64,000 nucleotides of DNA from Octopus sinensis (lineage: Eukaryota). The notes under the pieces are model-generated. The model saw only the letters and a program-made list of their open reading frames with translations. It had not been told where the DNA came from and did not search any database. The stretch spans positions 1-64,000 of the forward strand of contig NW_021833069.1 of NCBI RefSeq assembly GCF_006345805.1. The letters run 5' to 3'. The number at the start of each line of letters is the position of its first letter. The stretch's first letter is position 1. Of the stretch, positions 32,201 through 64,000 are shown in pieces. A program made the translations under genes and the position numbers.

Positions 32201-32416
32201 AACCCGCTTATCAACTATGGTTTTATGAGGATTCTCCTCTTTTTTAGACTCCTTCCCAAAAAAAAGACATTCACATTATTTTTTATAAATATTAACTTTT
32301 TATAAGTTTATCTTTTTGCGAGTTTTACGAATTCTGTGGTATTGTACGAGGCTTGTATATTTAGTCTCGTTCTCTTTGTTTTTAATTTTCTTTGTATTGT
32401 TCAAAATCGAGCGGAA

Positions 32417-35820: not shown

Positions 35821-35829
35821 GTCTCGTCG

Positions 35830-41596: not shown

Positions 41597-42005
41597 GGTA
41601 AATTGTGTTAATGATTGTGCTAATGTGGTTTCAACTATCAAAGTGTTTTTCAAAATCTGTTAATTGCACACTCTATTCAAGGTCGTGCAATCTGTAATTG
41701 CACATTCTGTCAAAGTCAAATATGATAATAGCTTTAATTTTGATTCATGTCGATAATGATATATGCATTTAATTTTAAAGAGAAAAACATAGGATGAATT
41801 GAATTTCTTTATCGCGAATAATTGGGAGTTCATCATTGTTAATATTCTCGCTGTCGTTTTCATCAAGGATATTCTTAATACGTGAGATTTTTGCCTTGAA
41901 GGTTTTAATGGACCTCATCATGAATGTCGAGGACATTCGCGTTGTTAATTTTAATCAAAATGCAGAAAATAATTTTTGATTTTTGGGGGAAAGGTTTAAG
42001 GACTT
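41597..42005. repeat. Near-identical duplicate of Helitron internal segment 39840-40190 plus one 95-bp unit
   Basis: ggtaaattgtgttaatgattgtgctaatgtgg.. occurs at both 39840 and 41597. Confidence 0.85.
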
Positions 42006-43965: not shown

Positions 43966-44059
43966 TTAATTAGGCAATGTATTATTATTTATTTAATGGG
44001 AGTCAATAAAAAATAAGAATTAATTCGTATAAAAAAATTCAAAATCTTAATCAAATTTT

Positions 44060-45240
44060 TTTAATCTACGGAGCACAGTCAATGTCAGGAAATAAATCTG
44101 GTCTTCAAGCTCTTGTAAAAAACAGAGCACCAGAAATTATCTGGACGCACTGCATGCTGCACAGATCAGCACTTGTCTCAAAGAATATGAGTCCAGAACT
44201 GAACGATATTTTTGCGCAAATTACAAAAGTTATAACTACATAAAACACAGTCCTTTAAGAGCTAAGCTTTTTGCAAAGCTGTGTGAAGATATGGATTCAA
44301 AATATACATCGCTTTTATACTATTGTGAGGTACGCTGGCTATCTCGTGCAAAAGTGATTAGAAGGGTGTTTGAACTCAAAGATCAAGTTGCAGATTTTCT
44401 TGATGAAAATGATATTGAAGATGCAAAGTTGTTCAGGGATGATGACTTTATTGTCAAATTTGCCTATTTAGTTGACATTTTTGGGAAATTGAGTATATTG
44501 AATAAATCAATGCAGGGACCACAACTACATTTATTCTCTCAAAAGGACAAAATAAAAGCATTTATGAAAAAATTGGTATTATGGAAATCAAATATACAAA
44601 AAAATATCTATGACATGTTTCCACTTTTAAACACCTTTTGCGCCATAGTGAACATTGAAGCAAACAAAGACATATTTGCTGAACATTTGGATTGTTTGTT
44701 GAAGCATTTTGCTCACTATTTTAAAGATCTCGACTGTAAAATGTTCGAATGGATACAGAATCCATTTATTGATGAAGAAGATAATCAATTTGCATTGACA
44801 ACTTTTGAAAAAGAAAAATTGATAGAATTGTCATGCGATACATTATTGAAACAAAAATTTGAGAGAGAACCGCTAATTTCTTTTTGGTTGAATGTAAGAA
44901 CGGAATATGAAATTTTGTCGAATAAAGCAATGAAAGTTTTGTTGCCATTTGCTACTTCATATTTATGCGAAACTGGATTTTCTGCACTAGCTGCAATTAA
45001 ATCTAAATATCGAACTCGTTTAGTAGTGACTAATGAGCTAAGAGTAGCACTCTCTGCGATGACACCAAGATTTGAAAAACTTTGCGCCAAGATGGAAAAA
45101 AAATTATCTCATTAACTTTTTGTTTTAAAAAATTGTTTTTGATAAAATAATAATTGTATTATATTATGGAATATAAAGGGAGGCGCAAGATTGTACTTTT
45201 TCTCTAAGGGAGGCGCGTAAAAAAAAGCTTGGAAACTCTG
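44060..45240 (+). mobile_element. hAT (Buster/ZBED5-like) transposase 3' half with right terminus
   Basis: HCMLHR, YCEVRWLSRAKV, FATSYLCETGFS and KSKYRTRL. Ends TTGGAAACTCTG followed by the nnnTAnnn flank TCTTAGAG. The left part is missing. Confidence 0.88.
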
Positions 45241-46360
45241 TCTTAGAGTTTGGATCATTGAAGATCCAATGTTTTCAATATACTCAAGATTTTCTATATT
45301 AAAGAATTCTTCTTGATTATAGAACTCTTTTAATTTTTTTTTAAGCGATAAAATCCACGTTAATGGTAACAACTTTCTGACTTTGTTCACACGGTTCTTC
45401 GCTAATTTCTTGTTCTATTTTTTCTGAATTATTTAATTCAAGTTCTTCACTTTCATTATATTCAATCTCAATATAAAGACTTTCTTCTAACGGATCAATA
45501 ATATCCATTTTTTCCAGAATATTATCATAATTTTCAATTAAGGGATTTTCATAATTAATATTTTCATTGTTTTGAGTCCATTTTGCATGAATGAAACAAT
45601 TTAAAATTAAGGAACTTTCTATTTTGTTCCAAGCATAATATGTAAATAATATTGAATCTTTTATGCTTAGTTGTTTGTGTGCAACATAGGGGTTTGTCCC
45701 AGCTTCAATTTTTTGAATTATATTAGAAAATTTTAGAGAATTGAATTTACATTTATACGATTTAATTATGCCCTGATCCATGGGCTGTAAAAAAGATGTT
45801 GATTTTATTTTTGATTAATTCAATGAAATCTGATACTAAATTAGGGTCAAAATTTGGAGTTGCAGATTCTTCAGTAATCCCGAGATTCAATGCAAAGGCT
45901 TTTGCTTTCTCAGTAATAATCCTATCATTTAAAATGGCTCCTTTAAGATCCATTGAATTGACCCAAGCAATAGTATTATCATCGATTTCAGCAAACTTTA
46001 AATATTGTTTGCGGGAAATGTCAGATCTTAGGTTATGAAACATAATGTTAGATCAAACTTCAAAATCTCAATTTTTTGATTGTTTTTTAGTCTTGTACAG
46101 TTACGTTTCATTAATACAACAACAAAGACAGATGTAACGTGTTAATAAATTGATTATATACCAGTAAATTTAATTAAAAAAATTATTTAAAATTAGGACA
46201 CATGGCGGATTCATTATAAAAAATATGGCGGATTCGAGAATTTGGCGGATTCGAGAATTTTTTCTAGGAAAAATGGCGGATAAGAGAATTTATTAATTAT
46301 AATTGGCGGATTCGAGGGTATGGCGGATTCGAGAGTCGGCGGATTCGAGAGACTTTACTG
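45241..46360 (-). mobile_element. pogo/Tigger-like deletion derivative
   Basis: CENP-B-type HTH (IITEKAKAFALNLG), MDQGIIKSYK..AWNKI..CF, GGCGGATTCGAGA subterminal repeats, and terminus ..tttactg|TA at 46360. Confidence 0.75.
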
Positions 46361-47258
46361 TAATTCGAATTTGACTCATCACTTAGTTCTGCATTTGTTC
46401 CGTCGAACATTAACAATGCATTTATTTGATCTTCTGTTTTCTCCGAATCTCTTTTATCCCCCATAAAAATTTTGAAGGGCGCCCATTTCGTAGTTTCATG
46501 TTGTGTAGTGTTATATTTGTATACAATTTCTTGATAAAATTCCTTGAATTTCCCTAGCATTCCGTTGTATGCACTTGTAGAGCTAATCCATCTTTTAATT
46601 GATTGATTAAACCTACAAATAAATTGACTATAAGGAACCACTCCACTTGCCCCTGAACCCAGGGTGCTCTAGGTCGTCCACATATATAAGTGATGTTTAG
46701 TAATTCGGAGCACATTAATTCCATGCATTTATTCTTGAACTAAAATTTGGATTCTGGAAGTTTTACCACTGCAAATTTGGAAAAGGAGTCGATTACAACA
46801 ACCAACTATGACTTTTTTTTGATTTTTTATCTGTTACTATGACTTATTCAAAAAAAGACCCATCCATAATTGCTGTTAAGGTTTGAATATCTCCTTAGAT
46901 CCACTAAATCTGCAATATACCGATCTCTAGGTCCTCTTGCAATTATGTGGGTGATAGTTGGATTTGTTGCCATGAAATTTTTCGACTAACACTGATTAAC
47001 AACATTACTTGGCAATAGACACATTTTGCTATCACACTACAAATTTCTTCCCTTGTTACTGTATATATTTGGTCTCTTAGTTTATTAATAAAAAGTTGTA
47101 GTTTTCACGCTAAAATATTTAAAAAAAAGAACAATAAATTATTAAAATAATTAAGAAAATTATTATTTCCAATGAAATTAAATATATAAAAATATTATTA
47201 TTATAAAATATGGCAGTAGGTGGGTTATCCAACCCAGTGGGCTATAAAACCGGTGACA
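46361..47258 (-). mobile_element. Ginger-like integrase fragment with 5' terminus
   Basis: PRDRYIADLVDL, VIDSFSKFA, GRPRAPWVQGQVE and FNQSIKRW. The GTGACA end is at 47258. The 3' part is cut by the pogo element. Confidence 0.8.
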
Positions 47259-47288
47259 AAGGTTATAATTAGTTTTAAATTAATCAGT

Positions 47289-47878
47289 GGAGGAATAGTC
47301 GATTCCAAAGGACTACACCCTTTGTCTTGCAAGAGGAGTGCAGGTCGCGCTCCCCGCCATGCCGCACTCAACGACATAATACGACGGGCCCTCGAGAGCG
47401 CAGGATTTCCAGCACACCTGGAACCCATCGGGCTTGACCGGGGAGATGGCAGAAGGCCCGATGGGATAACTCTTTTCCCGTACTCCCAGGGAAAATCACT
47501 CGCATGGGATGCGACGTGCGTAGACACGTTCTCCCAGTCCATGATTCTTCGGAATATTCATTCGCCCGGTTGGGCTGCTAATGCAGCAGAAAAGGCGAAG
47601 ATATATAAGTATTTGGAGATCGGAAAACTTTTCCGTTTTGTCCCAATCTCGATAGAGACGTCTGGTGTAGTGGGATCCAAAACCGCGGAATTTCTCAAGG
47701 AAATTGGGGCGATGCTGGCTAAACGAAGGAGGGACAGTCGCGAGGGGTATTGGCTTCGCCAACGTATCGGAATTGCAGTTCTTCGTGGCAACACGCACGC
47801 GATACTGGCTGCCGGAGCGTGACGATTTATAATATAAAACTAATCTAGCTTCGTTTTGGTTAATAAAATTAAATTTTC
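47289..47878 (+). mobile_element. 5'-truncated CRE-clade element with 11-bp TSD
   Basis: GLHPLSC..RHAALND, LEPIGL..RRPDG..AWDATCVDT and IETSG motifs. TSD AATTAATCAGT at 47278-47288 and 47879-47889. Confidence 0.88.
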
Positions 47879-48105
47879 AATTAATCAGTTATAAAATTTA
47901 TAACTTTATATATTGTATCGGATCCACCCAACGGAAACGACACGCCCTTGCAACAACAGCTATCCCCATAGTCTCCCATATCTTAAGCATTTCGGTCTTT
48001 TGCTGGGTACCCTACTTTGTCAGTCCGTGCAGCCGCCGATAGAACACCCTTCGTTTAAACTTAAACAGGGTGTTTTCTCCCCTGCGTGATACCGAGACTT
48101 ATAAG

Positions 48106-50597
48106 TAGGGCGATTTTTCTTAACCTGAAAAATAAAAATTTTAACCTAAAAACTTTAACTTTATTATGTCGCGAGCGCAGCGCGCGACCGAGCGCTAGAC
48201 GCGACTTTGACAGCTAACAAGCCTGTCATCAACAAATATATTTATTAAATTATTTAAAATTTTAACATGATTTAAAATTAAAATTGAAATAACTTAAGTT
48301 TTCCATTGAATCCCATAAAATAATTTATAAGTAGACCTTAATAGAAAAAGTAAAATCAATGAATACTGAACGCTAATTTGGTTTAGGTTGTGAGGGGGGT
48401 AATAATTTGACAGATCTCATTGCTATTTTTTCGTTTTAATCTCTAAAATTAGGTCTTCTAATCAAAAATGAACTGTGCAGACAGGCTTGCTCCTTCAGAA
48501 GATTCTTGTTTTGACATTTTAATAAATTATGAAGCATTTAGATTTTTTCTCATTATTCTAAAATATCAATTATAAATTTTAAAATATTATTTTTATTTTA
48601 TGAAATCGGTTTTAAAGCTTATTCTGCTTTGGCATCGATTTTAATTTTTGTTATCGAATATATTTAAACCCAAATACCAGCCCGTGTATTTGTCAATTTA
48701 TAGATTTGTTGATTGATCGGATCTAGAAATTGAGTGGTCGCTCGCTGCGCTCGGTCGCTCGCTGCGCTCGCGACATATTAACCTAAAAACTAAAAAAATT
48801 AACCCAAAAATTTAACTTTATAAATAAACAATAAAAACACTAAAACTGTTTGTTGCACATACAAATTACATAATTTTCTAAATTTTCTTGTAGAAAATTT
48901 CGGTTGGATCTTAGAAAACTCTTTATTAGAGAGAAAGTTCTTTCAACCGAGCACGAGGTCGGCTGACAATTCAGAAGTAATGCATACTCGGCAGGAGATA
49001 TTTGTAAATTAGTCATTCTAATTATGTCCGAAATATCGTTTGTTTTAATCCTTTTAATTATGTATTCTTTGATAAATTTGTCGTCATTCCCAAATTCCAA
49101 CGATTCTAAACAATAATATGCCTGTTCAATTGTGAAGCGCGTACTTTCAAACTTCGTAATAATATCTGCAATAGCGACATTTACTCGAAAACCTGGAATG
49201 TTTGAATAGCTTCGGATAAGGTCACATAGACTGCTCACTAATACATGGTTTCGAAGACTTTCTTTGGCTGTTCGAACTAGATATCCATCATCCGCGAATG
49301 ATTCGAAAATATTTTGTACTCCGGTCAGATTTTCTGAATAGTAAGTAGCGGGCTTAAGCCAACTCCCCCATCTTGTCAAATGCACACGATGTGGAATGGC
49401 GATGTTTCTGTCTTTAAATATTCGTTTTATTGTATTGTTCTTGTTAATTGCTGCTTGTACAGTAGCAATCATCAAATCAATTTCCGGATAGGAGGCTTTT
49501 ATTTTCTCACAACAATTGTGTAATAGATGAACAGTACATGTGATATGGAATAACTTGGGGTACAGATTTTTAAGTATTTTGCCAGCTAAAACTTAAACAT
49601 AAAATTTTACCCGATTTCATATAATTTGCGGCATCCGAAATTAACAAAAGGAAATTTTCCCTTTGAACCAAATTATTCCGAAGTACATCGTCGACTATTT
49701 GAGCAATGATGTTCTTGTTAGGAGCAGATTCTACCGGCTTAAACGATATCAGATATGTTGTTTCAGGAGAATTTAACAATCTAATCATCACAGCAACGTA
49801 TCTTTGGCCACGAATTTGTGTTTCATCAGCAATAGCAAAAACCTTTTGATCGCTACGAAATAAAGTAAATTTTTATACGCAATTTTTTGTTGAATTATCA
49901 ATTTTTGATCAATTGCGATTTGATTGACACAGCTTCTAGCCTTCAATGGTGAGGGTACTCGCACAGAACCTCCGTAAAACAATTCTCTAAGCCATGGCAT
50001 AGATAGTTTGTTTAGCTGAATGTCGGATTTAATGAATGCTCTGGTTACCTGTAGAGCCCAATCATCATTTTTGGCATATTGGTCAATATTTGTTTGGTGT
50101 GATGTGGTCAGATAATCTACAAAAAAAAATTTTTGTTTCGAATAAACTCAATGAATTTTGATGTTTCTGTGAGGATCGATGAAAATTTACAAAATGCCTT
50201 TTTTCGCATTTAATATTACACAAACAGAGACGACAATATAATACACCATCCTCAAGAATCATAAATTCTTCCGGATAATCCTTAACAATGGCTTTAGCTT
50301 TGATTTGATACGATTTTGCTATCTTAGGCATGTCAACCAAAAATTTTTGTTACAAAATGTATTATTTATTTATTTTATTTATTATTTAAAGACCAATACG
50401 GGCAAAAAATTAATAAATTATATCAAAAATTATAAGGTTAAAATAATTTTAACCTTATAATTTTAAATTTTAACTTTTTAACCTAATAATAATGTTTAAT
50501 ATGCATTTATTTATAATAAAATATAGTTAAAAAATCATTTAAATTATTATTTATTTACTATTATTAAATTTTAACTTTTTTAACTTAGTTCGCCCTA
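48106..50597 (-). mobile_element. hAT-superfamily element (CGGBP1-like transposase, decayed), both ends intact
   Basis: TAGGGCGA..TCGCCCTA termini and an 8-bp TSD CTTATAAG. BED-like finger (LYCRLC..HRSSQKH), LLISDAANYM, LTRWGSW and PTSCSVERTFS. The ORF is broken. Confidence 0.85.
48167..48775. mobile_element. TGTC..GACA MITE nested in the hAT end, 5-bp TSD TATTA
   Basis: TIR TGTCGCGAGCGCAGCG. TATTA lies at 48162-48166 and 48776-48780. Confidence 0.85.
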
Positions 50598-50639
50598 CTT
50601 ATAAGTATAAAGCTTTATCTGATAAAGGATATACAAATA

Positions 50640-51165
50640 GAGCCTTACGCACGATCCCATAAGATATTGCATAATACGATAACTAATACAAGTTGGTTTA
50701 TCTACGATAACTAATACATTGCGCAAACAAGGAATTCATAAAAGGAGGGCACGACATATTCCTCTACTAAGAAAAGTCCATATATCAGCGCGACTAAAAT
50801 TCGCTCAGAATATTATAAATAAAGATTTAAAATATATATAATGAACATATTATGGTCAGATGAAACCAAAATTGAACTTTTTGGCCTCAATTATAACAAA
50901 TATATTTGGAGGAAAAAAAATCAATAATATGACAAAAAATGTACCATACCGAAGGTTAAGCATGGAGGAGGCAGCATAATGTTTTGGGCGTGTTTTTCGT
51001 CTCAAGGAGTGGGTTAACTATTTTTCATAGATGGAATATTGAATGCCTAGATGTACGTCGAAATTTTGGAAAATTTTTTAGTTACGTCCATCAATAAATT
51101 AAAGCTAAGAAGCAATTGGACGTTTCAACACAACAACGATCCCAAACATTAAGCTAAAATAACTA
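50640..51165 (+). mobile_element. Tc1-like transposase remnant
   Basis: LWSDETKIELFG, KHGGGSIMFWACFS and FQHNNDPKH, with in-frame stops. Confidence 0.85.
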
Positions 51166-51169
51166 CGTC

Positions 51170-52110
51170 GTATTATTGCTCGAACTATGTTTGGTCATAA
51201 ATATGAACAAAAAATAATGAAGATACCTTTGTCAGATAACACTGTTTCTCGTCGGATTTGTGCTTTGTCGGAAAATATTGAAAAAAGTGTCTCATTTTCT
51301 ATTAAAGAAACTCGATTTTCATTACAACTTGACGAAGCCACTGATATTTCGGGAATGGCACATTTGTTGGCATATATACGATTTGTTTATTCTGGGAAAA
51401 TTACAGAACAATTCTTGTTTTGCAAGCCTCTTTTAACTACTACTCGAGCAATTGATATGTTCACGATATTAAACGATTATTTCAATATCAATAATATTTC
51501 ATTTGCCAATTGTATTGGTATATGTACAGATGGAGCCCCGTACATGTCTGGTCGTATTAATGGACTTGTTTCATTAGTTGAATCTAAAAATAATAAGATA
51601 ATATCATCACATTGTTTTTTGCATCGAGAAGTATTGGTTGTAAAAACATTACCTATGAATTTAAAATCTGTCTTGGATGATATTATCCGAATGATTAATG
51701 ATATAAAAAGTCGACCCAAAAAATCTCGCATTTTTACTACTATTTGTGATGAAATGGGGTCAAACTTTACAAATTTGTTACTTCATACCGAAATTCGATG
51801 GCTATCAAGGGGTAAAGCATCAACGAGGGTTTTTGAAGTAAAGGACGAAATGTATGAGTTTTTTAAATTGGAGGGACATTCTGAATTTGTTGAAAAAATT
51901 CAGAATCCAATTTGGTCTTTAAAACTTGCGTATTTATCTGACATTTTACAAATATTAAACGAGGTTAATGCAAGTATGCAAGGACGTTCTGAGACTATTT
52001 TATCGTCGACGGACAAATTAAATTCTTTGAAAATGAAAATCAGTTTTTGGAGAAAAAGGGTTTTAGATGGCGATTATAGTATGTTTCCTAATACAAATGG
52101 TTAGTTATAT
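51170..52110 (+). mobile_element. hAT (ZBED5/Buster-like) transposase central fragment
   Basis: ORF 51187-52104: PLSDNTVSRRI, LQLDEATD, CTDGAPYM, HCFLHRE and TEIRWLSRGK. Confidence 0.9.
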
Positions 52111-52639
52111 ATTTTAATTATGTGTGGTGCTGTTCATGTCCGCTTTTCTCGATAAGAAGAAAATGAATCCCATGGGCCCTCCTGCAGAAGTAAATTATAA
52201 AAAAGATATGGTGGATGCAGGAACGATGTCTCTGGGGCTGGATAATGCCACAAGAGCTAGTATAAACAATAACCCTACGTTTGGAAGTCGTGTTGCCAAT
52301 ACTAACTTTCACACTCTTTCTGCCATTATTGAGGATGTCAATTGTGTCTCTAAGAATGAATAGGTGTCACAGGCTGTTCATGCCACCAAACAAAGACTGG
52401 GGAGAATACCCAGAGGTGGCTGGAGTTTTATCCTTGAAAAGTTCAACGTGAAATTTTCTGAGAGTACGAGTCTAACCAGATTGAAATCAAATCAAATCAA
52501 AATTTATTCCAAAGACCACCGTTAACCAAAAAAAACTAACTAGGTGATCCCGACGAATTTGATCATTGCTCTCAGCTTCGCTCTGTGCTGCTCTCTTAAG
52601 CCCACACAAGATCGTTGAGGGCGGGTCGTTCCTTTATAC

Positions 52640-54635
52640 CAGGGGTCGGCAAATCGCGGCCCGCGGGCCAAATTAGGCCCAGGAAGATTTAAAAATGGCC
52701 CGCGAACAAATTTTATAATACTAAGGGAAATTGGCCCGCCGACAAATTTTTCCAACTAACATGGCCCGCGGGCAAATTTAGTAAAGTACTAGACTTTTAG
52801 TAATATAGATTTATACATACGTTTTATCTATTATTAAAAATTAAATAAATTTATAAACGTGTTAATAATTTTGTGTGGTGAATTTGAATGCCGAATTGTT
52901 CGAAAAGAACTAAAGATCTTCAAACCCGTACGTTTAATCCAGATTGGACTCATGAATATTTCTTTATTGAGGATTATGGAAAACCTATATGCTTAATATG
53001 TTTCGAAAAAGTTGCTGTCAAAAAACTTTATAACATCAAGCGACATTATGAAACTCGACATTACGAAAAATTCAGCAAGTTTACAGGAGAATCTCGCTTA
53101 AAGGAAATTAAGAGACTCGAACAAAATTACCAAAAGCAAACAACATTTTGTATAATTTGAGTTGTGAAAAAGATGATATCACACGTACAAGTTACGAAAT
53201 TTCAAAGATAATTGCGAAACGAATGAAACCATTTTCAGACGGAGAATTTATAAAAGAATGCTTAATGGCAGTAGCTGAAAATCTATTTCCTACAAAAAGA
53301 AACATTTTTGAATCTATCTGTTTATCTCCAAGAACGGTAACAAGAAGAGTAGAAGAAATGTCATTCGATTTAAATAACTCTTTAAAAAACATTTTTGGGA
53401 ATTTCAAATATTTTTCTATCGCATTGGATACTAGTACTGACAGAAGAGATACTTCTCAGCTTGTCATATTTGTTCGAGGGATAACTGAAACATACCAAAT
53501 TTTTGAAGAATTTGTCAAAGTTATTCCAATTATGGGTACAGTGACAGGAACCGACGTTTTCTTGCATTTAATGGAACTTTTAACAGAATTAAATCTTCCA
53601 CTTGCAAAATTAGTTGGAATTACAACAGACGGGGCTCCATCTATGGTTGGGAACAAAAAGGGAACTATTACATTACTCCAAAATGAAATGGAAAAATTTG
53701 GAATCGAGCACAATTTGGTTAAGATTCACTGTATTGTTCATCAAGAGGCGTTAGTTGCCAAATCAGTCAGGTTACGTGAGACAATGGATGCTGTTGTTAA
53801 TGCAGTAAATTTTATTTTATCCCGCGGCTTGAATCATCGGCAGTTCAGGCAATTTTTAATCGACACTGAAGCAGAATATGGGGATCTTTTATATTTTTGT
53901 AATGTCAGATGGCTTAGTAGAGGATCAATGCTCAAAAGGTTTTTTCATATACGGGAAGATGTTATAATTTTTCTTGAAGAAAAGAATTATGATGCTTCAT
54001 ATTTCCGAAATACTGATAATATTTCCAAATTGGCATTTTTTGTAGACATAACTTCACATCTAAATGACTTAAATTTGAAACTGCAGGGAAGTAATAAATT
54101 TATACACCAAATGTATGCCGAAATCACTGCTTTTGAAAATAAATTGAAGTTGTGGGAATTACAGTTACAAAAAGGAAACATGACGCATTTTGTGAATTTT
54201 CTTTCTACGAATCCGACTGATGTTCCGGAATATGCAAACATAGTTATGGAATTGAGATCAGAATTTTCATCACTTTTTATGGATTTAAGAGTAAAATGCG
54301 CATATATAATTTTTTAGGCTCATAAAAATCTTTTCAACATTTTTTCAATCCCATTTGATGTTGAAACTGAGACAGTACCAGGGTGTTATCAAATGGAATT
54401 ACTTGAAATTCAATGCGTCAGTACACTTAAATCAAAATATTTTTCTGAAATGGATATTTTGTGCTTCTACAAAAATTTTGTATGTGTCAGAAAATATCCG
54501 CAATTAACCGACAATGCTATGAAAATGGCTTGTATATTTGGAAGCACATTTTTATGTGAACAGTTATTCTCTAAAATGAATAATGTAAAAAATTGTCTGA
54601 GAACGAGGATTACCGATTCACATCTTAACGATATA
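52640..54635 (+). mobile_element. SPIN/GTF2IRD2-like hAT transposon, left end intact, right end lost
   Basis: Left TIR CAGGGGTCGGCAAA after the flank CTTTATAC. Has a zinc finger (CLIC..RHYETRH), TTDGAPSM, HCIVHQE, VRWLSRG and FGSTFLCEQLFS. One frameshift near 53155 and a 27-nt intron at 54291-54317. Confidence 0.9.
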
Positions 54636-56137
54636 CAGTCAAACCCCGTTTACTCGCCAAATTTGGGACCAAGCCAAAAATGGCGAGTAACTGAATTTGG
54701 CGAGTAACTGAATAATCAATATCAAATTTTAATCAAATTTTATATTCACAAAATTAAAAATAATTAAATTAAATAATAAAAAAATCATTATTTCGAAAAT
54801 AAAGAGTCAAATTACGAATTTAGACTAAAATGATCGTTCAATGTTGTTTTTTTAGTAAACATCGTATCTTCGATTAATTGATTGATCATTTGAATTGCGT
54901 TAATATTAAAAGTATCGTCTTGAGTATAGTACTTTTTTTATATTATGCAACATTTTAAACGCATCTTCATGATTTATTTCATTTGCAGGTGTTTTCTCTT
55001 CAAAAATACCACGTGGTTGTTTCTCATTTACGTCATCATCGTTTTCGAGGGATTCTTCCACTTCGTCTATTTCAGTGTACGTGTAATCAAGAAAATCTGA
55101 TTGTTCCATTGGATCCAAAATATTCAATTGCTTTATTGTGTCCTCATATTTCTCAATCGTATAGTTAGAAGATTGAATTTGCTCTTCACATGGAATCCAC
55201 TTAGCATGCCTGAAACAATTTTTGATAGTTTCTTCGGTGACTTCATTCCAACCAAAATAGGTAAATAAAACTCCATCTTTAAGTGTTAAATTTTTGTATG
55301 ATTAATGAATGCCATATCCGCATTCAATTTTCTGAAGAATTTCATTAAATTTGAACTTATTGAATTTAGTTTTAAAGGAACGAATTATTCCTTGATCCAT
55401 CGGCTGCAATATTGTTGAGGTGTTCGGAGGAAGAAAAAGAATTTCAATAAATTTTAATTCGATTAATATTTTATGTGATGGGCATTGGTCAATAATTAAA
55501 AGAATTTTTCTTTTTTTCTTTTTTAATTCAATATCCCAATGATAAAGCCATTCATTAAAAATTTGTTTGAGTCATCCATGCATTTGAGGAATGACAGTAT
55601 TTTAAATATTTCTCAATTTTAATGTTTTTAAAACATCTTGGTTTCTGATATTTTTCAATCATTAATGGAATTTTCTTATCTGACCCCGCCATATTTGTAC
55701 ACAGAAATAGCGAAAATCTACTAATGATTAATAAAGTTTCAACCGATCTTTAAGCATTTTATTTCCAGGTCGAATTTTTGAGCAAATGCTTTTTGAAGGA
55801 ACATTTTTATAAAAAACACCAGTTTCGTCACCATTGTAAACATTTTCACGATCATATTGTTGTAATTTCGTAGATAAAATTATTTGAAATTTTTCAATTT
55901 GCTCATTTAGATTTTCAGTTATTGAGCCAGATTCTCCATGGAATAATCTTAATTTTAAATTGTTTCTCTTTTTGAATCTGGAAAGTCATCCATTGCTTCC
56001 CATAAAATCAGTTATTTCATGTAATCTTGCAATACTTTTTGCTTTTAATAAAATTGAAAATTTGATTTTTCGTTAAAAAAGTGGCGACTAACTGAGGTGG
56101 CGAGTAAGTGGGGTGGCGACTAACCGGGGTTTGACTG
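54636..56137 (-). mobile_element. pogo/Tigger-like element, TA-flanked, decayed DDE transposase
   Basis: TIRs CAGTCAAACCCC / GGGGTTTGACTG with TA on both sides. NGDETG, LIIDQCPSH and LQPMDQG remnants. Confidence 0.9.
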
Positions 56138-57448
56138 TATCTAATTCCTAAAAAGAACGAACGTGAGACCCCGAAAGATTTACGGCCTATAACATGCATG
56201 TCGACACTTTATAAGTTAGTTACCAAGTGTGTTAATGGAAAACTGTCTGAGTTCATGGATGTATTTGGCTTAATTTCAGACAATCAACTTGGTACGAGGA
56301 GACGGTGTCAGGGTGCTAAAGAACAGGCCCTTATTAACCAATGCCTAAATAAAGAGTATGGAAATGGGCTATACTCTGCATGGATTGATGTCAAGAAGGC
56401 TTTCGATTCTGTTGACCACGACTTTTTATTTCATGTGTTGGAGTGTCCTGGGATACCTGTATGGATTGTTAACTTTGTTAAAAGGACTGTACGAATGTGG
56501 ACTGTAAAGCTCCATGTTGACGGAAGGAGAATTGGTTCTGTAAAGTTGACCCGAGGGATTTTACAAGGAGACTCGTTATCTCCGCAACTGTTTGTTATGG
56601 TGATGGACCCACTAAGCAGGATTCTTAATGCCATGTTTCCAAAGGTTCAGATTAATCAACAGGACCCAAATATGTTGACCTATTCTACTAATCATTTGTT
56701 CTTCATTGACGACCTAAAGATATTCGCTCTTAAAGAAGATGTAGTAATTAAAATGATGGAAGCTGTTGATGGATTCTTTAAAACTGTTGGCTTGGAGATG
56801 AATTCAGAAAAGTCAGCATCAAATGTCAAATCTTTATCTTGTTGTGAGATTTTGGAAGGAGTCAAAGGATATCGCTACTTGGGTGTACTTGAAGATGCAG
56901 GAAGTAATGTTCTTAAGAGTAAAGTAATGGATTCTATCCTTGGAAATGTAAAGGAAAGGATAACCATGCTTTCAAAGACGAAATTAAATGCGGTAAATTT
57001 ATTCCACGCTATAAATGAATATGCCATTTCTCTATATAATTATTACATCGGACTTATTAATATTGAACCTCATGAATTTGATTGTATTGACCGTCAAATA
57101 CGACAACTTCTTACGACTCTCAGACTCCATCTCAAACCTGCAAATAAAGAGAGGTTATATTTAAATTGGAAATCTCTTGGGAGAGGACTTGCTTCAGTCT
57201 CTTTCAGAAGTGAACTGATACTTTTCCAGTTCATGAAAAGTTTAGAAAGACAGTCGACAGTATGCTTACGGAGATCGGGAATCCTGCGTGTGATACAAAC
57301 AAATAAATGGCATATGGCCACAATTGCAGGACTTCTCGCCTCCAAGTATGCAATTCTCGACATAGAGAATTTGGGTGTTGAGTTTATCAAAGATGCTCAA
57401 AGAAAATATTTGCTTAAGAACATCAATTTTGCAGACGAAATTTTGTAG
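56138..57448 (+). mobile_element. R4/Dong- or NeSL-like non-LTR reverse transcriptase; open frame, truncated at both ends
   Basis: YLIPK..RPITCMSTLYKL, WIDVKKAFDSV, GILQGDSLSP, HLFFIDDLK, YRYLG and ERLYL..GRGL. Confidence 0.9.
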
Positions 57449-57554
57449 ACCCGAAGACCAATGCACATACCCAGACTGTTGAGAGGTTTTTTACGACTTT
57501 TCACGATCGATCGCCTTGCAAGATGAATTTATTGGTATTTTTTATCATATTATT

Positions 57555-58866
57555 TGTCACCGGCTGGATAATGCCCCCTCAACGTTATTTTAAAAAAATA
57601 AATATTTTTTCAAATTAATTTTGATTAGATTTATTGATTTTCTTAATTATTTTAGTAATTTATGATAGTTTTTTTTCAAATTAATCTACCGTGCAAATTT
57701 ATTTTGGTTATCTAAGTTTTCCAATTAAAATATATATTTCAAATCAAAAGAGAAATAGTCATTGGCAGATAGCCAGAGTATTGCCTCTGACTATGGCTAT
57801 AGATATTCTTTCGATTAAATACCGGTGCTCACACGGGTCGCCGGTAACCCTTTCGATTAATGAGGCAATGCGCTGGAGTAGGGTCCGAGTAGAAGGCCCC
57901 TGTATTCCTGACGTCTCAACAGCCAGGGGGAAAAACACTCTCCCGTTCCCAATTCCAGCGTATTTCTCAGCTTTTCTCTTCTCAGCCCGTTCAGACGGGG
58001 CTCCAGGATTCTGGATGCATAATTTGGTAAAACTTGCCAGGCGGAAATCAGCGGAGGAAATTACTAGAAAATTAAAGAATATTTTTTACATGATTGGTCC
58101 CCATTTATTCTACAGACGGATAATGGGAAAGAATTTAATTTGTAAATTTATCTTTAGATTCAATCAATCGATCAAAAGGTGGGTTAGCTCAACTAGTGCC
58201 TCAAATGGGTCTTTTGGAAGCTATAAAGACTTCTTTCAAGAAATCGTTTATAAATATAACATGGCGAAGCATGACACGACCAAGAGGACACCTTTCGAAA
58301 TTTTTATGGAAGGAAATCATTTAATCCCGGAGAAAATAAGTTCGGCGTTATTGTCATTCGATGGAAATGAAGCGGTTGAATCAAGTCAATCGGAGATAAT
58401 TGGATCTGATTATTTCGAAAACGAGGACGATTGTTTGAATCAACGAAGTGTGTATGAAAGCCATGTTTTCGCCGGAGAAAAAATGAAAAGGAGGCGGAAA
58501 TAGAAATTTAATGAAGATTTAGCCGTAGGATATAATGTCCTACTGAGACATGATATTGATGCAAATCCAAATAATTTTTTATATAATAAAAATTCATGAA
58601 TTTTTAATATTTGTTTTTAAATGATAGACCTAAAAAATTGTATAATTATAATAAAAAACGTTATTGATTCGGGAAAATTGGTGATGCCGGTTTTTGCCGA
58701 CTCTTGGAAAAATTCATTCAATCAAAAAATTGATAAAAAATTGAATAAATCGACTTAATTTCATTATCAAGTTATTTTTAATTAATTATCAGGTTATTTT
58801 CGTTTGATTTTAATAAAATTTTTAAGGGGGTATTATCCAACCCTGGGCATTATCCAGCCTGTGACA
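57555..58866 (+). mobile_element. Ginger-like element, 22-bp TIR, 5-bp TSD TTATT
   Basis: TGTCAC(C/A)GGCTGGATAATGCCC at both ends. Integrase remnants KSAEEI and RFNQSIKRW..YN..HDTTKRTPFEIF. Confidence 0.85.
57690..58018 (-). mobile_element. CRE 3' fragment inserted antisense in the Ginger element
   Basis: The minus strand reads AERAEKRKAEKY..FFPLAVETSG..RISIAIVRGN. Confidence 0.75.
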
Positions 58867-59152
58867 TTATTTTTTATAGAAATTAAATATAATTATTCTT
58901 ACAAGATTTTGTTTGAAAGCCAGGATTTGTCTACCTTTTGGCAAAAAAAGCAATTTAAAGACAAATTTCCAAAGATTTGGGAACAAATAATTAAAATTTT
59001 ATTATGTTTTCCAACAACATATCTTGTGGAATCAGGATTCAGCGTAATAAACAGAATATTGAGCGATGAACGTAACAAGCTTGATATTTGCTCGCGAGGA
59101 GATGTCAGATTATTTTTAACACGCTTGGACCCTGATATTCATGAACTAATTA

Positions 59153-60696
59153 TGTCACGAGCCTAGGATGTTACCGAGCCTAGGTCGTTACACTTATGGA
59201 CTTGGAAAAAAATTCAAAAAAATATTTGAATTCAATTTCAAAATCGACTTTGTCAAAATAAATATTATAAAATGACAAATACTTAACGAACGAACAGATT
59301 TTATTGACTTAGCAACCGAAAGAGAAGAGTTATATGAAAAGGTTTTATTAAAATCGAGACACCGAAAGCCTCCTCCTTGCTTTCCTTTTCACTTCTCATG
59401 CCCTTTGCAATGAGCAGAGGACTTGCCGAATGTTTTGAGTTTGTTCATCTAGCTCTCTGGGGAGATCCTGATCAAGCCGTAGCTTATACGCCAGTTTAAT
59501 CGCAAGCGCCTTGTTTTCTCCAGTTTGGTGATTATGCGATTTCTCTCGTCTGTAGGGTACCACCTTCATGTCCATAGATAAGGACTGGTTCTACAGTCGC
59601 CTTATAGATGAAGAGAAAGGTGTCTGGGGAGAGATGGAAGCGTATAAGGCTTCTCAGGATCCCGGAACATTTCCTTCTTCTAGATTCCACGAACTTAAGG
59701 AACGATCCGTCAGCCCCGATCGTTACCCCAAGGTAGCGTAGGTCGTCAGAGATTCTTAGTCCCATTGTCTCCAGAAGTGGTTCTCTTCCTTTCCGAGTTT
59801 TAGAAACCCACGTGATGGTGGACTTGTCTCGTGCTAAGGAGAGGGCTTTCTCCGTAGCCCAAGACTCAACCCTCGCTATATATTCCCTCAGCCTTTTCCA
59901 AGACAAATACTTAAAATGGAATTGGATGCCAATATTTTCGATGATAAAATTTAAAATTAATGCCAACTAGTCTGTGCTTTAAAATCGATTTCCTAACTAA
60001 AAATAATATTTTAATTTATGAATTGCTATTTTGTTCAAATAAGAAAAATTCAAAATGCTTCAAATAAAAAAATACGCAGAAAATGTTATTTTATTCGAAA
60101 ATTTTGTCTATTTGAATGTTCGGCTATAAATGTTTCTCTGCTAATTAGGATTTAAATTTTTTTTTAACAAAACAATCAAGACAAATTATGTTATTTAAAT
60201 TTTTTAATTCTTTTCATAAGCGTCTTCTTAGTAGTTCCATCGTCCATTTCAACTCTGACCATATTATGCGGGAGGATTTCACTTATTGTACAAACTTCTC
60301 CGTATGGACTTTCGAATTTCTTGAGTGCAAGTGAAGGATTGGTACCATAGTCCTTTTGAATCCTTATCTACAATTTAGAATAATTTGAGTTTACCTTATC
60401 TCCAATTTTAAATGAATGTTTTGACTGATGAACACCCATGAACACGCAATCGATACCCATCCATATCTCTTACAAAAGAACGCGACATAAGTAACACAGA
60501 AGAAACACGCCTTTATATATATATTACAATTACAGATGTATGGTTATCCGGATATTTTTGTTTCAATATTTAATAGATTAATTTTAAATATTAAGAATAA
60601 TTTTATTAGGATTAGGGATAAATTAATTTTTAATCTTTATAGAAAAATAAGCGAAATGTCACGACCTAGGCTCGGTAACAACCTAGGCTCGTGACA
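59153..60696 (-). mobile_element. Ginger-like element, TIR of about 39 bp, 5-bp TSD AATTA
   Basis: TGTCACGAGCCTAGG(A/T)TGTTACCGAGCCTAGGTCG at both ends. AATTA lies at 59148-59152 and 60697-60701. The integrase tail contains a 27-nt intron (60394-60368). Confidence 0.88.
59330..59970 (-). mobile_element. CR1/Jockey-type LINE 3' fragment nested in the Ginger element
   Basis: LRYLGVTI and IYKATVEPVLIYG. Confidence 0.7.
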
Positions 60697-61674
60697 AATT
60701 AAAATGCATGAAAACCAAAGCTCTCATTAAATAGTTTAAAAAAGATTTTAAGTCAATAAAATTAATTAAAAAATTAAATAAGTCTTTGTTTCTTTGGTAC
60801 CGAAATAACTTGGTTTGGTACACTGACGTTTTTTTTGGTACGCCAAAAAAAAAGGTTGAGAATCACTGATTTGAAGTCAGTTAAGTTGAAAAACTTCATA
60901 AATAGTCTTCTCCCACGCTCGTCCCATCAGGTACCTTATTTTAATTAGTCAGATGGTCTGCTTTGGGGGCAGTTTATTGGGAAGAATTATCCAAGTCCTC
61001 GATCAGCATTGGGTCTTTGTTCTATTGGTTTTGGTCGTGTTGCTGTTTTTGGCGGTTCGGGGAGCGAGGTGAGTAACAATCCGCAATCAACATCTATGAC
61101 GCCGTCATATAATCAAATTGATTATATTTTGTGTAAGCAGTCATAGAAGAGATTATTATTTGACTCCCGTTTGTATGGAGGAGCTTTGGCAAATAGAAAT
61201 CATAAGATGTTAGCAGATTAAATGCAAATCATGCACATGCTAGAAAAACGAAAAACATTAGGGACAAGGAACTAATAAATAATCCTGCAATCATCACGAA
61301 ATACTAGCAGCATTTGTATCATTATCTTTCTGATATTCCCATGGATGGCTTACCTCACATAATGTGAAAAAAACTCCGGACGCTATACTAATGGCTACCA
61401 AAAAAACTGTTGGGATTCACGAAACTACTATAAAAGGAAAAAATAAAGGAGCATATAACTCGATAGTCAATAAATTGTCTATACGTCAACGAGATTTAAG
61501 ACTCCAAATTGAAATTTGTGATCTTAACAAAAATACAAATTAAGAAAACTGCGGAACAAAATCAAACACGAAATAAAAAGGAACTAACCAAATAACACTT
61601 TGAAATAATTTTTTTACAAAAATCTTTTTAGCTATTTAAAATGTTATTTTTATACACTTGTACTTACGTGGATC

Positions 61675-62638
61675 ATGATTCTAACTAACTCTTGCAGCAT
61701 TCATTTTTTACAAGAAATAAAAACATTTTACTGTTCAATGAGCAAAAAGGGGATAGAATTGAATCCATTTTATTCTAAATATGCCGAAAAGATTAAAAAG
61801 TATAAGCATTCGTATAAATTCCAGTATATCTAAAAAAGTGGTTCAACCACAAGAAACACTCCTGGACACACCGGGATGTAAACCCCGACAAAAACTAGTG
61901 ATTTGATTGATTACAAAAATTTAGAAATTAAGTGACATCATGAAAACCGAAATGATTGAGGACAAGAACGCTCGAGAAATAGTGAAGGAAAGCTTTTGGT
62001 GTTAATAAATAGATTTGGGAAGAGTACCACGCAAAGAGACAGTGCTCCCTCTACTCTACGATTCCTGTTTGCATTCCCTACTTTATAAACTAAGTCTTCG
62101 GTGTTCGAACTTATTCAAGAGCGTGCCACGCTGTGTCCTCATGTGTGTTTTAAATTTTATTAAAAATATTGATTAACTGAATTAATATTTTTAATTAATA
62201 AATTCTATAGTTCGTGCTACCTGTGGCTCGATTGAATGGGTACGAGTTCTTTTACCTCAACTACTACGACAATTCAGTCATCTTCTATCCATTAGAGGCT
62301 TACCGAGTACATTTATGAGCTTATATTTATAGAAACAAGGAAAAGATGTTCCCCCAGCCCTTGCAGTGCACTATTTTACTGAATTGGCCCAATCAAAGTC
62401 GCTCGTTCTTATGCAGGGGCACTATTCCACGGCCTGTCTGGTATTTTTCGATTACTCACTTTGGAGTGCTGAGCAGGCTTGCATGCTGGCCAATCAGTTC
62501 AAAATGTACTACGGTGCTTATAGTGGGGACAGAATTGGGCTACTTAGGGTTTTTAATTACTCTCCACATTTGTTTTCTGTTACTGATTTGATTAAGGAAC
62601 TACAAATAGAAGCTACAAGAGTTGTTGATAATAAATAA
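61675..62638 (+). CDS. ATPAF1: ATP synthase mitochondrial F1 complex assembly factor 1 (ATP11), complete
   Basis: Spliced frame: NPFYSKYAEKI..LSDIMKTEMIEDK..IWEEYH..IP..FELIQERATLCPHFVLPVARLNGYEFF..HYFTELA..LVLM..LANQFKMYY. The start codon is tentative. Confidence 0.88.
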
Positions 62639-64000
62639 TAATTTTTAATAATATTATTTTTAATACATTTTTGATTCATTTTGTGATGTGTGGCACATTT
62701 AGGTCCGGTAGTTTGTTTGACATCGAAGAGGCTTCACCGGTTAAAAGATGGAGTTCTTTCACTTTGAATGGCTCGAGAGTTTATATTTGATTTTACTTTA
62801 TTAAGGCGATTCATGCTCCCCACGAAATAGATTTATCCTGTGTATTTTCTAAAATCAACGCTTTACCATCAAATAATGAAGTTAATATGAAAATGAAATA
62901 TAAATTCAAAAAGTATTAATCCACATCTATGTTGAGAGGTGAGTTGGCCTCTCGACTGGTTTTCCTCCGTCACAAACAAAACTCTATCAGGTCTCTCAAC
63001 TTCAGTAAAGTCGATAAGAAAATCTTCAATGTCGAAAAAGTCAAAAAGGATAATTTTTTGTTTGTTCTTTGCCGAGATTTATTTTCAAACCAAAACCGAG
63101 CAATTGTAATTCTCTCGGAAGATGCTATTTCTATCACTTCTGGATTTGAGCTTACCATTTTTTACCCTTGGTTTGTTGCTGCTCAGTTGATTTAGGGACA
63201 TGTGCATAGTTGGGGATATCATTTACTACTTCAACTTAAGCAAATTGAGTTATAAGAATGTTTTAATGTGAGTGTACTAAATGTTGGTGTTTATAAAAGA
63301 GTCAAACAATTTATTTTAACCAAGAGTATTAGTAAATGGCATCGGGGTATGTGGCACTTAGTTTTTGAAGAAAACTGTTTAAATGGTCTCTGTCCTGGGT
63401 CTCTACAACGCATTTTATCTTGATTATAGGGAACATAGGCTTACTCTTGTCTTGAAGACGTCCTCTTTGACCCAGGCTCTTTCATGGAGAATGTCCTTAA
63501 TACTAACAGTGAGTGGAAAGCCAACCTCACATTGCAACTGGCTATTAGATTGCACAGGCCTAGCACTCCTCCCACTCGGTCACTCACTGTCACAGAAAAT
63601 TTAGACAGACGTCCGTCGGTGGCTAACCCACGGTCGATGCAGCGTCCGACGATCGACATGTCTATGTTTCCCCCGCATAGCGGAATGACGACCCTTCGTT
63701 TAGTTAACAATGTCAGTCTACGTTTTGCCACTCAACTCGGGGACTAGTCCTTGGCAGATCGCAGCCAGTCCTACGGCCCCTCCTCCTTCCACCAAAAATT
63801 TTTCATTCTCCAGCAACCTCAGGATAGCCAGAGAAATGTTTTCTTCCCTACAGAATAAACTAGACAAACCATACAAAACACATAAATTTTTGTCTACATT
63901 TTTAGAGGCGATTTGAAAGGCCGTCTCTCCTACTGTAGGTACTGCCAGACCTAAATTCAGTTATGCAAGTCCTGCCATCTGCTAGAGTTGATTTAGGCTC
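62317..64000. repeat. Direct repeat of window positions 1-1684 (offset 62,316 bp)
   Basis: All ORFs in 1-1684 recur with identical translations at +62316. I saw no nucleotide difference by eye. Confidence 0.97.
63329..64000 (-). CDS. Repeat of the 3' half of the threonine dehydratase gene
   Basis: Same sequence as 1013-1684. Confidence 0.9.

What the first reader, a model, noticed from the sequence alone, without database searches (positions are those of the whole stretch)
61675..64000. 62,316-bp periodicity with a seamless join inside a gene: circular molecule or large tandem unit
Seen in sequence: 1-1684 equals 62317-64000. The join (62316/62317) lies inside a 26-nt ATP11 intron (62307-62332, gtacatttatgagcttatatttatag) whose flanking exons join in frame (..LEAYR|KQGKD..). 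The end-to-start continuity is therefore biologically coherent rather than arbitrary padding of a linear contig. Inference: a 62.3-kb circle carrying about 12 intact nuclear genes, a very recent tandem segmental duplication, or an assembler-circularised collapse of such a duplication. I found no telomeric array.
Basis: partly seen in the sequence, partly recalled or inferred. Interest (0 to 1): 0.7.

Follow-up and report, generated by a model that had tools for sequence, protein, structure and literature searches.

The report
Direct 11.7-kb repeat, not a circle
The apparent 62-kb "period" is the start of an 11.7-kb stretch that occurs twice, 62,316 bases apart, in a 116-kb linear contig of a dicyemid-like parasite sitting in an octopus genome assembly; it is an ordinary large duplication (real or made by the assembler), and nothing shows a circular molecule.

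Summary
In detail: window 1-1684 equals 62317-64000 exactly, and the ATP11 gene with its 26-nt intron is as described. The window is not padded or wrapped. It is bases 1-64,000 of a 116,224-bp linear record, contig VCDQ01013367.1 of the Octopus sinensis assembly GCA_006345805.1. So 62316/62317 is ordinary contiguous DNA, not a junction.

Reading on to record position 74,445 shows that the second copy matches window 1-11,714 only. There are no substitutions and two 1-bp indels over 10,972 bp, then about 1.1% substitutions plus four indels over the last 742 bp. After that, at least 441 bp match nothing in the window. The real novel adjacency is therefore at 11,714/11,715, in transposon-rich DNA beside a small hAT element.

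A wrapped circle is not supported. The likeliest reading is a recent direct duplication, probably tandem with a 62.3-kb unit, whose first copy is cut off by the contig start. An assembly-made duplicate is the main rival. Record positions 74,446-116,224 could not be read, which leaves tandem, multi-lap and dispersed layouts open.

The DNA is not octopus. Introns are 22-31 nt, GC is 36%, and LINE and hAT elements are abundant, which points to a dicyemid kidney parasite. Some of its ORFs are annotated as octopus proteins.

The parts
1..1684 (.). Part of repeat copy 1 whose twin is visible inside the window. It is also the very start of the source contig.
   Evidence: Identical to 62317-64000. Window coordinates equal record coordinates of VCDQ01013367.1.
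62317..64000 (.). Beginning of repeat copy 2. It continues outside the window to record position ~74,004.
   Evidence: L001 (record 53993-74445) contains window 53993-64000 exactly and runs on.
1..10972 (.). Near-perfect part of copy 1. Against record 62317-73286 it has 0 substitutions and only two 1-bp deletions, at unit positions 2784 (in an A run) and 6034.
   Evidence: Global alignment. blastn gave 99.86% identity over 11,677 columns.
10973..11714 (.). Diverged tail of the repeat: 8 substituted bases, two 1-bp indels, and indels of 12 and 11 bp in 742 bp. Differences become denser toward the breakpoint.
   Evidence: Heterogeneity against the first 10,972 bp gives Fisher p=2.5e-10.
11714..11715 (.). 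End of homology between the copies. This is the only candidate novel adjacency (copy 1 joined to the 50.6-kb spacer). Copy 2 instead continues at record 74,005 into unrelated transposon-like sequence.
   Evidence: No nucleotide hit for record 74,005-74,445 anywhere in the window.
10803..11639 (.). Small internally deleted hAT transposon with terminal inverted repeats CAGCGGTTCTCAA and a perfect 8-bp target-site duplication ATCTAGTA. It is present in both copies, and the switch from identity to divergence lies inside it.
61738..62638 (+). Intact ATP11 (mitochondrial F1-ATPase assembly factor) gene with 7 exons. Its 26-nt intron at 62307-62332 contains the point that corresponds to the contig start.
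17..322 (+). Last exon of ATP11 in copy 1. The upstream exons are missing only because the contig begins at position 1.
   Evidence: Coordinates 62333-62638 minus 62316.
836..2474 (-). L-threonine ammonia-lyase (PLP enzyme) gene inside the repeat. Introns are about 22-27 nt, and two in-frame introns are left unspliced in the largest ORF.
   Evidence: Pfam PALP E=3.5e-35. Best homologues are 44-46% identical at 98-99% coverage. Exon chain by tblastn and blastp. The ORF 1677-2129 occurs twice in the contig.
7356..8268 (+). Tetraspanin gene inside the repeat.
   Evidence: Pfam PF00335 E=1.6e-13. This is a rough gene model.
8617..10193 (+). Mak10/NAA35-like gene inside the repeat (weak match).
   Evidence: Pfam PF04112 E=3e-4, below the curated cut-off.
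11715..62316 (.). 50.6-kb spacer between the two copies. It holds a MARK/KA1 kinase (~13.4-15.7 kb), PDCD5 (~16.0-16.6 kb), a CTP-synthase-like gene (~32.4-34 kb) and the ATP11 5' part. It also holds LINE reverse transcriptases, FAM200-type hAT genes, PIF1/Helitron fragments and three satellite arrays.

Best explanation
The window is the first 64 kb of a linear 116-kb long-read contig. The contig carries a direct repeat of about 11.7 kb whose copies start 62,316 bp apart. The layout is A (1-11,714), B (11,715-62,316), A' (62,317-74,004), then C (74,005 onward).

My preferred reading is a recent tandem duplication of a 62.3-kb chromosomal segment (unit = B + A) in the nuclear genome of a dicyemid-like parasite.
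- The duplication junction would be at 11,714/11,715, in transposon-rich intergenic DNA, so no gene is broken and about 7 to 8 genes are doubled.
- The left-hand unit is represented only by its last ~11.7 kb. That is what I would expect, from general knowledge of how long-read assemblers behave, if reads anchored on the junction reach only about one read length into sequence identical to the other copy.
- C would be the unique right flank.
- The 1-1.5% differences in the last 742 bp may be allelic. Dicyema japonicum heterozygosity is 1.24%.

Shown: the coordinates, the identities, the breakpoint, the linear record, and the intact ATP11 gene.
Inferred: that the missing left part of unit 1 exists, that the A-to-B junction is present in real molecules, and that the organism is a dicyemid.
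For: - The window equals record 1-64,000 of the 116,224-bp contig VCDQ01013367.1.
- Copy 2 aligns to window 1-11,714: 0 substitutions in 10,972 bp, then a diverged 742 bp, then no homology.
- The A-to-B and B-to-A' adjacencies are both continuous sequence without gaps or N. B is therefore flanked by A on both sides, as in a head-to-tail duplication.
- Copy 1 starts exactly at the contig end and is about 11.7 kb long.
- Both copies share the same hAT insertion with the same target-site duplication and 75 bp of right flank. They are therefore copies of one locus, not independent transposon insertions.
- True substitution-type differences (A>C, G>A, T>G) link H1 to B and H2 to C. This argues for two real DNA versions rather than consensus noise.
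- C-left still has 21-24-nt introns, so the contig is not a parasite/host chimera at that point.
Against: - Record 74,446-116,224 could not be read, so I have not shown that C is unique. It could be an insertion followed by a second copy of B.
- The left unit's B is not in the record, so tandem arrangement is inferred, not seen.
- The sharp change from 0% to about 1.1% divergence inside the repeat is not what a simple recent duplication predicts and needs an extra assumption (allelic differences, recombination between older paralogues, or error-prone repair).
- A duplicate sitting exactly at a contig end, of about one read length, is also the signature of an assembly spur.
- No read depth or read-level evidence is available.
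Confidence: 0.45

Rival explanations
1. Assembly-made duplicate. The real genome has one copy of A. The first 11.7 kb of the contig is a spur attached to B through a false overlap in a repeated segment (the hAT region or a paralogue of it). Alternatively the assembler walked a repeat-induced loop, using reads of the two haplotypes for two passes.
For: - Copy 1 lies exactly at the contig start and is about one long-read length.
- The only differences over 11 kb are two 1-bp indels typical of long-read consensus.
- The identity switch lies inside a transposon.
- The DNA is a minor contaminant of a 2.7-Gb host assembly, so coverage may be low (and inference).
- Differences become denser toward the breakpoint, as expected where polishing reads thin out.
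Against: - A false overlap needs an unobserved third copy of the hAT-plus-flank segment exactly at the left edge of B, together with a coverage gap there.
- No other copy of 9.5-12.5 kb exists in the window.
- Known false duplications usually sit side by side or across scaffold gaps, not 50 kb apart inside one gap-free contig (my own knowledge).
- A random chimeric read would far more likely join parasite DNA to octopus DNA than to a point 50 kb away in the same orientation (inference).
Confidence: 0.25
2. Multi-lap contig of a circular 62-kb molecule (eccDNA) or of a longer tandem array. C would be a copy-specific or haplotype-specific transposon insertion followed by a second, slightly different copy of B. 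The contig (1.865 units) would then be nearly two laps.
For: - The record length is 1.865 units and it starts inside the unit.
- Perfect identity for 11 kb followed by about 1% divergence is what a switch to another haplotype or copy during a second lap would give.
- C-left starts with transposon-like sequence: a LINE-like N-terminal fragment and IS1595/ISXO2-like exons, identified by eye and by a tblastx E=7e-7 match to a LINE region.
- Dicyemids are reported to make extrachromosomal circular DNA (Noto et al. 2003, as cited in PMC6543705).
Against: - At least 441 bp after the breakpoint have no counterpart in the unit.
- The 305-aa hAT gene at 51187-52104 has no second exact place in the contig and no cluster mate at 90% identity or above. 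This is weak evidence, because an insertion over 1.8 kb would push the copy off the contig.
- Reported dicyemid circles are short, median about 700 bp among those above 500 bp. Conserved domains on them were only those of mitochondrial genes, and the non-mitochondrial circles are described as non-coding (PMC6543705).
- The unit looks like ordinary gene- and transposon-bearing chromosomal DNA, with no replication or partition genes.
Confidence: 0.15
3. Dispersed (non-tandem) segmental duplication. A block of at least 11.7 kb was copied and inserted about 50 kb away. What lies left of copy 1 is not the end of B.
For: - Only the 11.7-kb block is seen twice.
- The right-hand neighbours of the two copies differ completely.
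Against: - Copy 1 begins inside an ATP11 intron only because the contig starts there, so its true left edge is unknown.
- Uneven divergence (0 against about 1.1%) is not explained.
- Direct orientation with the spacer running straight into copy 2 is what a tandem event gives.
Confidence: 0.1

Closest known systems
Recent tandem segmental duplication (copy-number gain by unequal crossing-over or replicative repair)
   Same: - Two direct copies with near-100% identity.
- The spacer runs head-to-tail into the second copy.
- The breakpoint lies in transposon-rich intergenic DNA.
- Whole genes are doubled without disruption.
   Different: - Only the last 11.7 kb of the presumed first unit is in the record.
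- Divergence is concentrated in the 742 bp next to the breakpoint.
- No depth or read evidence is available.
False duplications and end-spurs in long-read assemblies (from my own knowledge, e.g. work on false gene gains caused by duplication errors)
   Same: The duplicate sits at the extreme end of a contig, is about one read long, and differs from its twin mainly by 1-bp indels.
   Different: The twins are 50 kb apart inside one gap-free contig rather than adjacent or across a scaffold gap. Substitution-type differences link each version to its own flank.
Over-long (multi-lap) contigs of circular molecules such as plasmids, mitochondria and eccDNA
   Same: The record is longer than one unit (1.865x) and starts at an arbitrary point inside a gene.
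   Different: Periodicity is not maintained: unrelated sequence follows after 11.7 kb of the second lap. The content is ordinary nuclear genes and transposons.
Dicyemid extrachromosomal circular DNAs (Noto et al. 2003; Zverkov et al. 2019, PMC6543705)
   Same: Probably the same group of organisms. Circles there are also inferred from terminal repeats of assembly contigs.
   Different: Those circles are small (the pool above 500 bp has a median length of 702 bp). Apart from the mitochondrial mini-circles they are described as non-coding. This unit is 62 kb with about 7 to 8 nuclear genes, and its record is not terminally redundant.

Membership tests
Circular molecule / wrapped circular record | The source record is circular, or the window was completed by wrapping its end to its start. 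| tested here: not met
   The window is record positions 1-64,000 of a 116,224-bp contig. L001 reads straight through 64,000 to 74,445.
Circular molecule / wrapped circular record | Periodicity is kept for as far as the sequence extends, with only unit-to-unit junctions. | tested here: not met
   Homology ends at unit position 11,714 (record 74,004). The next 441 bp have no match in the unit. Record 74,446-116,224 could not be read.
Circular molecule / wrapped circular record | Physical evidence of circularity: junction-only reads, exonuclease resistance, excess depth. | not testable with these tools
   No reads or depth data are available.
Tandem segmental duplication | Two direct copies of high identity. 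| tested here: met
   11,714 bp against record 62,317-74,004 gives 99.86% identity overall, with 0 substitutions in the first 10,972 bp.
Tandem segmental duplication | Head-to-tail arrangement of complete units. | tested here: inconclusive
   A-B-A' is continuous, so one complete unit plus the tail of another is seen. The rest of the first unit would lie left of the contig start.
Tandem segmental duplication | Unique flank beyond the last unit. | tested here: inconclusive
   441 bp of non-unit sequence follow copy 2.
Tandem segmental duplication | Doubled read depth and reads spanning the junction. | not testable with these tools
   No read data are available.
Assembly false duplication | The duplicate lies at a contig end, is of read-length size, and differs by consensus-type errors. 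| tested here: met
   Copy 1 is bases 1-11,714 of the contig. There are two 1-bp indels in 10,972 bp. This fits a real junction equally well.
Assembly false duplication | No real molecule carries the junction, and depth is halved over the twins. | not testable with these tools
   No read data are available.
Dicyemid (Dicyemida) nuclear genome | Extremely short spliceosomal introns (median 27 bp; PMC6543705). | tested here: met
   ATP11 introns are 25, 27, 31, 28, 68 and 26 nt, validated by a continuous Pfam match. Threonine ammonia-lyase introns are about 22-27 nt. C-left introns are 24 and 21 nt.
Dicyemid (Dicyemida) nuclear genome | Composition and repeat content like D. japonicum (GC 36.7%, 49% repeats, LINE-rich; PMC6736024), and a matching host. 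| tested here: met
   Window GC is 36.2%. It holds several LINE reverse transcriptases, hAT elements, PIF1 fragments and satellites. The record comes from Octopus sinensis, the host from which D. japonicum was collected.
Dicyemid (Dicyemida) nuclear genome | Direct sequence match to a Dicyema reference. | not testable with these tools
   No dicyemid genome is searchable here. The protein search found no relative above 46% identity and no octopus orthologue, so the attribution remains an inference.
hAT DNA transposon (element at 10803-11639) | Terminal inverted repeats and an 8-bp target-site duplication. | tested here: met
   The arms CAGCGGTTCTCAA match in reverse complement, and ATCTAGTA is present on both sides.

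The most novel reading that the evidence does not exclude
The A-to-B junction comes from a real 62.3-kb extrachromosomal circle, or a somatically amplified tandem array, excised from a dicyemid chromosome and carrying about 7 to 8 intact nuclear genes. It would coexist with the chromosomal copy that runs on into C. This would extend the developmentally regulated circular-DNA formation reported for dicyemids from sub-2-kb non-coding circles to large gene-bearing ones.
Probability: 0.08. Interest if true: 0.65.

Novelty: new member of a known kind. Interest (0 to 1): 0.2.

Why it matters
For the finding itself, little. A window-truncated view of a large direct repeat looked like a 62-kb period, and the 'seamless join inside a gene' is simply contiguous DNA. 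This is a useful caution for the scan: a match between the two ends of a fixed-length window defines a repeat spacing, not a topology.

Two side results have practical value.
- Contigs of 100 kb and more, apparently from a dicyemid kidney parasite, sit in the Octopus sinensis reference assembly. Some of their ORFs are in RefSeq/UniRef as octopus proteins. This can mislead work on cephalopod gene families and horizontal transfer.
- These same contigs are long-read dicyemid sequence that could be mined.

If the duplication is real, it doubles a block of housekeeping genes in an otherwise strongly reduced genome.

Tried and rejected
**Rejected hypotheses**
- Wrap-around padding of a 62,316-bp contig. 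The source record is 116,224 bp and the window is its first 64 kb.
- Perfect 62.3-kb tandem periodicity. Homology ends after 11.7 kb.
- Ciliate or other non-standard genetic code. ORF counts under alternative stop sets were uninformative, and gene models built with standard stops align full-length to homologues.
- Octopus origin. Introns are 22-31 nt, and no octopus or cephalopod protein appeared among the 120 best relatives of the threonine ammonia-lyase model, which peak at 46% identity.

**Searches that found nothing**
- The junction probe in viral contigs.
- tRNAs and Rfam families.
- Homologue search with the ATP11 product.
- Homologue search with the first exons of region C.

**Attempts to read record 74,446-116,224, all unsuccessful**
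- Exact look-ups of four window ORFs.
- Ten further ORFs tested for presence in the collection, none present.
- Clusters of the three annotated proteins, which showed no second copy on this contig.

**Other**
- The Octopus sinensis genome paper is not held, so the assembler and the tissue are unknown to me.
- The automatic exon-chaining models are rough. The CTP synthase and kinase models contain errors and serve only for domain identification.

Full report
**1. The observation**

Window 1-1684 is identical to 62317-64000, with 0 mismatches. A 52-nt probe across 62316/62317 is unique in the window.

ATP11 spans 61738-62638 on the + strand and has six introns of 25, 27, 31, 28, 68 and 26 nt. 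The last intron is at 62307-62332. The spliced 231-aa product matches Pfam ATP11 at E=6.9e-32 in a single stretch that runs across the position in question.

**2. Where the window comes from**

Exact look-ups of window ORFs returned one record: NCBI GCA_006345805.1, contig VCDQ01013367.1, 116,224 bp. The fetched stretches show that window coordinates equal record coordinates:
- L002 is record 1-12,129 and equals window 1-12,129.
- L003 is record 41,187-62,104 and equals the same window range.
- L001 is record 53,993-74,445 and contains window 53,993-64,000.

The window is therefore not padded or wrapped. Position 62316/62317 is ordinary internal DNA, so the in-frame ATP11 exons say nothing about topology. 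In any fixed-length window, a match between its two ends only gives the spacing of a direct repeat.

**3. How far the repeat goes**

L001 let me read copy 2 up to record position 74,445.
- It aligns to window 1-11,714 (99.86% over 11,677 columns).
- Over the first 10,972 bp there is no substitution and only two 1-bp deletions, one of them in an A run.
- Over the last 742 bp there are 8 substituted bases, two 1-bp indels, and indels of 12 and 11 bp. These become denser toward the end. The contrast with the first 10,972 bp gives Fisher p=2.5e-10.
- After unit position 11,714 (record 74,004) the two copies are unrelated. Record 74,005-74,445 has no nucleotide match anywhere in the window, even with 7-nt words.

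The contig therefore reads A (1-11,714), B (11,715-62,316), A' (62,317-74,004), C (74,005-116,224). The record is 1.865 units long.

I could not read record 74,446-116,224. The only tool that reaches this record needs an annotated protein as a handle, and none was found there.

**4. The breakpoint region**

A small hAT element lies at 10,803-11,639. It has terminal inverted repeats CAGCGGTTCTCAA and a perfect 8-bp target-site duplication ATCTAGTA. Both copies carry this same insertion and 75 bp of its right flank, so they are copies of one locus. The switch from identity to divergence, at 10,973, lies inside the element.

To the right, copy 1 runs into transposon-rich DNA. By eye, a LINE-type endonuclease-like ORF lies on the minus strand at 12,012-12,403. 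Copy 2 runs into a LINE-like fragment (tblastx E=7e-7), followed by exons that I read by eye as IS1595/ISXO2-like transposase, with 24- and 21-nt introns. No cellular gene crosses the breakpoint.

**5. Gene content**

The repeat A holds:
- the last ATP11 exon (17-322);
- an ORF without a family match (613-~870);
- an L-threonine ammonia-lyase gene (836-2474, minus strand; Pfam PALP E=3.5e-35; best relatives 44-46% identical over 98-99% of the model);
- a LINE reverse transcriptase (4705-5373, minus strand);
- a tetraspanin gene (7356-8268);
- a weak Mak10/NAA35-like gene (8617-10193).

The spacer B holds:
- a MARK-type kinase with a KA1 domain, PDCD5 and a CTP-synthase-like gene;
- ATP11 exons 1-6;
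- several reverse transcriptases, FAM200-type hAT genes and PIF1/Helitron fragments;
- three satellite arrays.

That makes about 7 to 8 cellular genes, not 12.

**6. Whose DNA it is**

GCA_006345805.1 is the PacBio/Hi-C assembly of Octopus sinensis. The sequence is not octopus-like.
- Introns are 22-31 nt in ATP11 and in the threonine ammonia-lyase gene.
- The standard genetic code applies.
- No octopus protein appears among the 120 best relatives of the threonine ammonia-lyase model, and the best relative of any kind is 46% identical.

Dicyemids have a median intron length of 27 bp (PMC6543705). Dicyema japonicum has 36.7% GC, 49% repeats and many LINEs, and was collected from O. sinensis renal sacs (PMC6736024). 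The window has 36.2% GC. I therefore attribute the contig to a dicyemid parasite. This is an inference, because no dicyemid reference could be searched.

**7. Explanations**

Shown: a direct repeat of 11.7 kb with 62,316-bp spacing in a linear, gap-free contig. Copy 1 is at the contig start, and the two copies have different right-hand neighbours.

*Preferred reading (0.45): a recent tandem duplication of a 62.3-kb unit.* The junction would be at 11,714/11,715. The first unit is represented only by the roughly one read length that junction-anchored reads can reach into sequence identical to the other copy. C would be the unique right flank. The clustered differences may be allelic, since heterozygosity is 1.24% in D. 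japonicum. Other possible causes are recombination between older paralogues or error-prone repair near the junction.

*Main rival (0.25): an assembly spur or loop.* The position and size of copy 1 fit this. However, it needs an unseen third copy of the hAT segment exactly at the left edge of B. No such copy is in the window.

*Multi-lap contig of a circle or longer array (0.15).* This would explain 11 kb of identity followed by about 1% divergence as a haplotype or copy switch. It requires C to be an insertion followed by a second copy of B, which I could not check.

*Dispersed duplication (0.10).* This cannot be excluded, because the left edge of copy 1 is cut by the contig start.

**8. Comparison with known things**

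This is an instance of a common kind, a large recent direct duplication or its assembly equivalent. It fails the two sequence-level tests for a circular record: the record is not wrapped, and periodicity is not maintained. The dicyemid circular DNAs in the literature are small, with a median of about 700 bp among those above 500 bp. Apart from the mitochondrial mini-circles they are described as non-coding. They are a lead, not a match.

**9. Verdict**

The circle reading is not supported. Whether the duplication is real or assembler-made is undecided without reads. Interest is low (0.2). The most useful by-product is that parasite contigs of 116, 169 and 251 kb sit in the octopus reference and carry proteins named as octopus proteins.

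Noticed in passing
window 1677-2129 (-), 51187-52104 (+), 53265-54317 (+); L004 = VCDQ01011782.1 38652-59704: Three ORFs of this dicyemid-like contig are held in NCBI/UniRef as proteins. The cluster mates of one of them are XP_029656044.1 and XP_029655550.1, named 'GTF2IRD2-like [Octopus ...]', on two further contigs of 250,969 and 169,060 bp; the first was confirmed to belong to this assembly (VCDQ01011782.1), the second was not looked up. L004 shares a 2-kb hAT copy at 97.2% identity with window 52635-54635. Parasite DNA seems to be annotated as host genes in the Octopus sinensis reference.
   Followed up: partly
window 26932-28671 and 40140-40933: There is a 96-bp satellite (18 copies, 97% matches) and a related 93-bp array (8.5 copies). 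Each lies next to a minus-strand PIF1/Helitron helicase fragment (26250-26867 and 38896-39363). These may be Helitron-associated tandem arrays.
   Followed up: no
window 42017-43972: A 75/150-bp satellite with 26 and 13 copies has a very strong strand asymmetry (GC skew -0.48 over 42-44 kb). It creates a spurious 333-aa ORF.
   Followed up: no
window 22416-22465, 46222-46351, 54681-54713, 56081-56130: Short arrays of 16-17-bp units share the core TGGCGA. One sits just upstream of the reverse-transcriptase ORF at 56198. They may be terminal sub-repeats of a retroelement family.
   Followed up: no
window 1677-2129 (-): The largest exon-ORF of the threonine ammonia-lyase gene reads through an in-frame 24-nt intron, giving 8 extra residues against homologues. 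A second in-frame 27-nt intron is retained further on. ORF-based or vertebrate-tuned gene callers therefore mis-annotate these genes.
   Followed up: partly
window 32417-34446 (+): The CTP-synthase-like gene scores unusually low for such a conserved enzyme (N-terminal domain 31 bits, GATase 22 bits). Either my exon model is poor or the gene is degenerate.
   Followed up: no
L001, record 74,005-74,445 (outside the window): The sequence just after copy 2 encodes what looks by eye like a zinc-ribbon plus IS1595/ISXO2-type transposase segment, interrupted by 24- and 21-nt introns. It could be a transposase-derived gene or a Merlin-type element with host-style introns. No relative was found by the word-based protein search.
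   Followed up: partly
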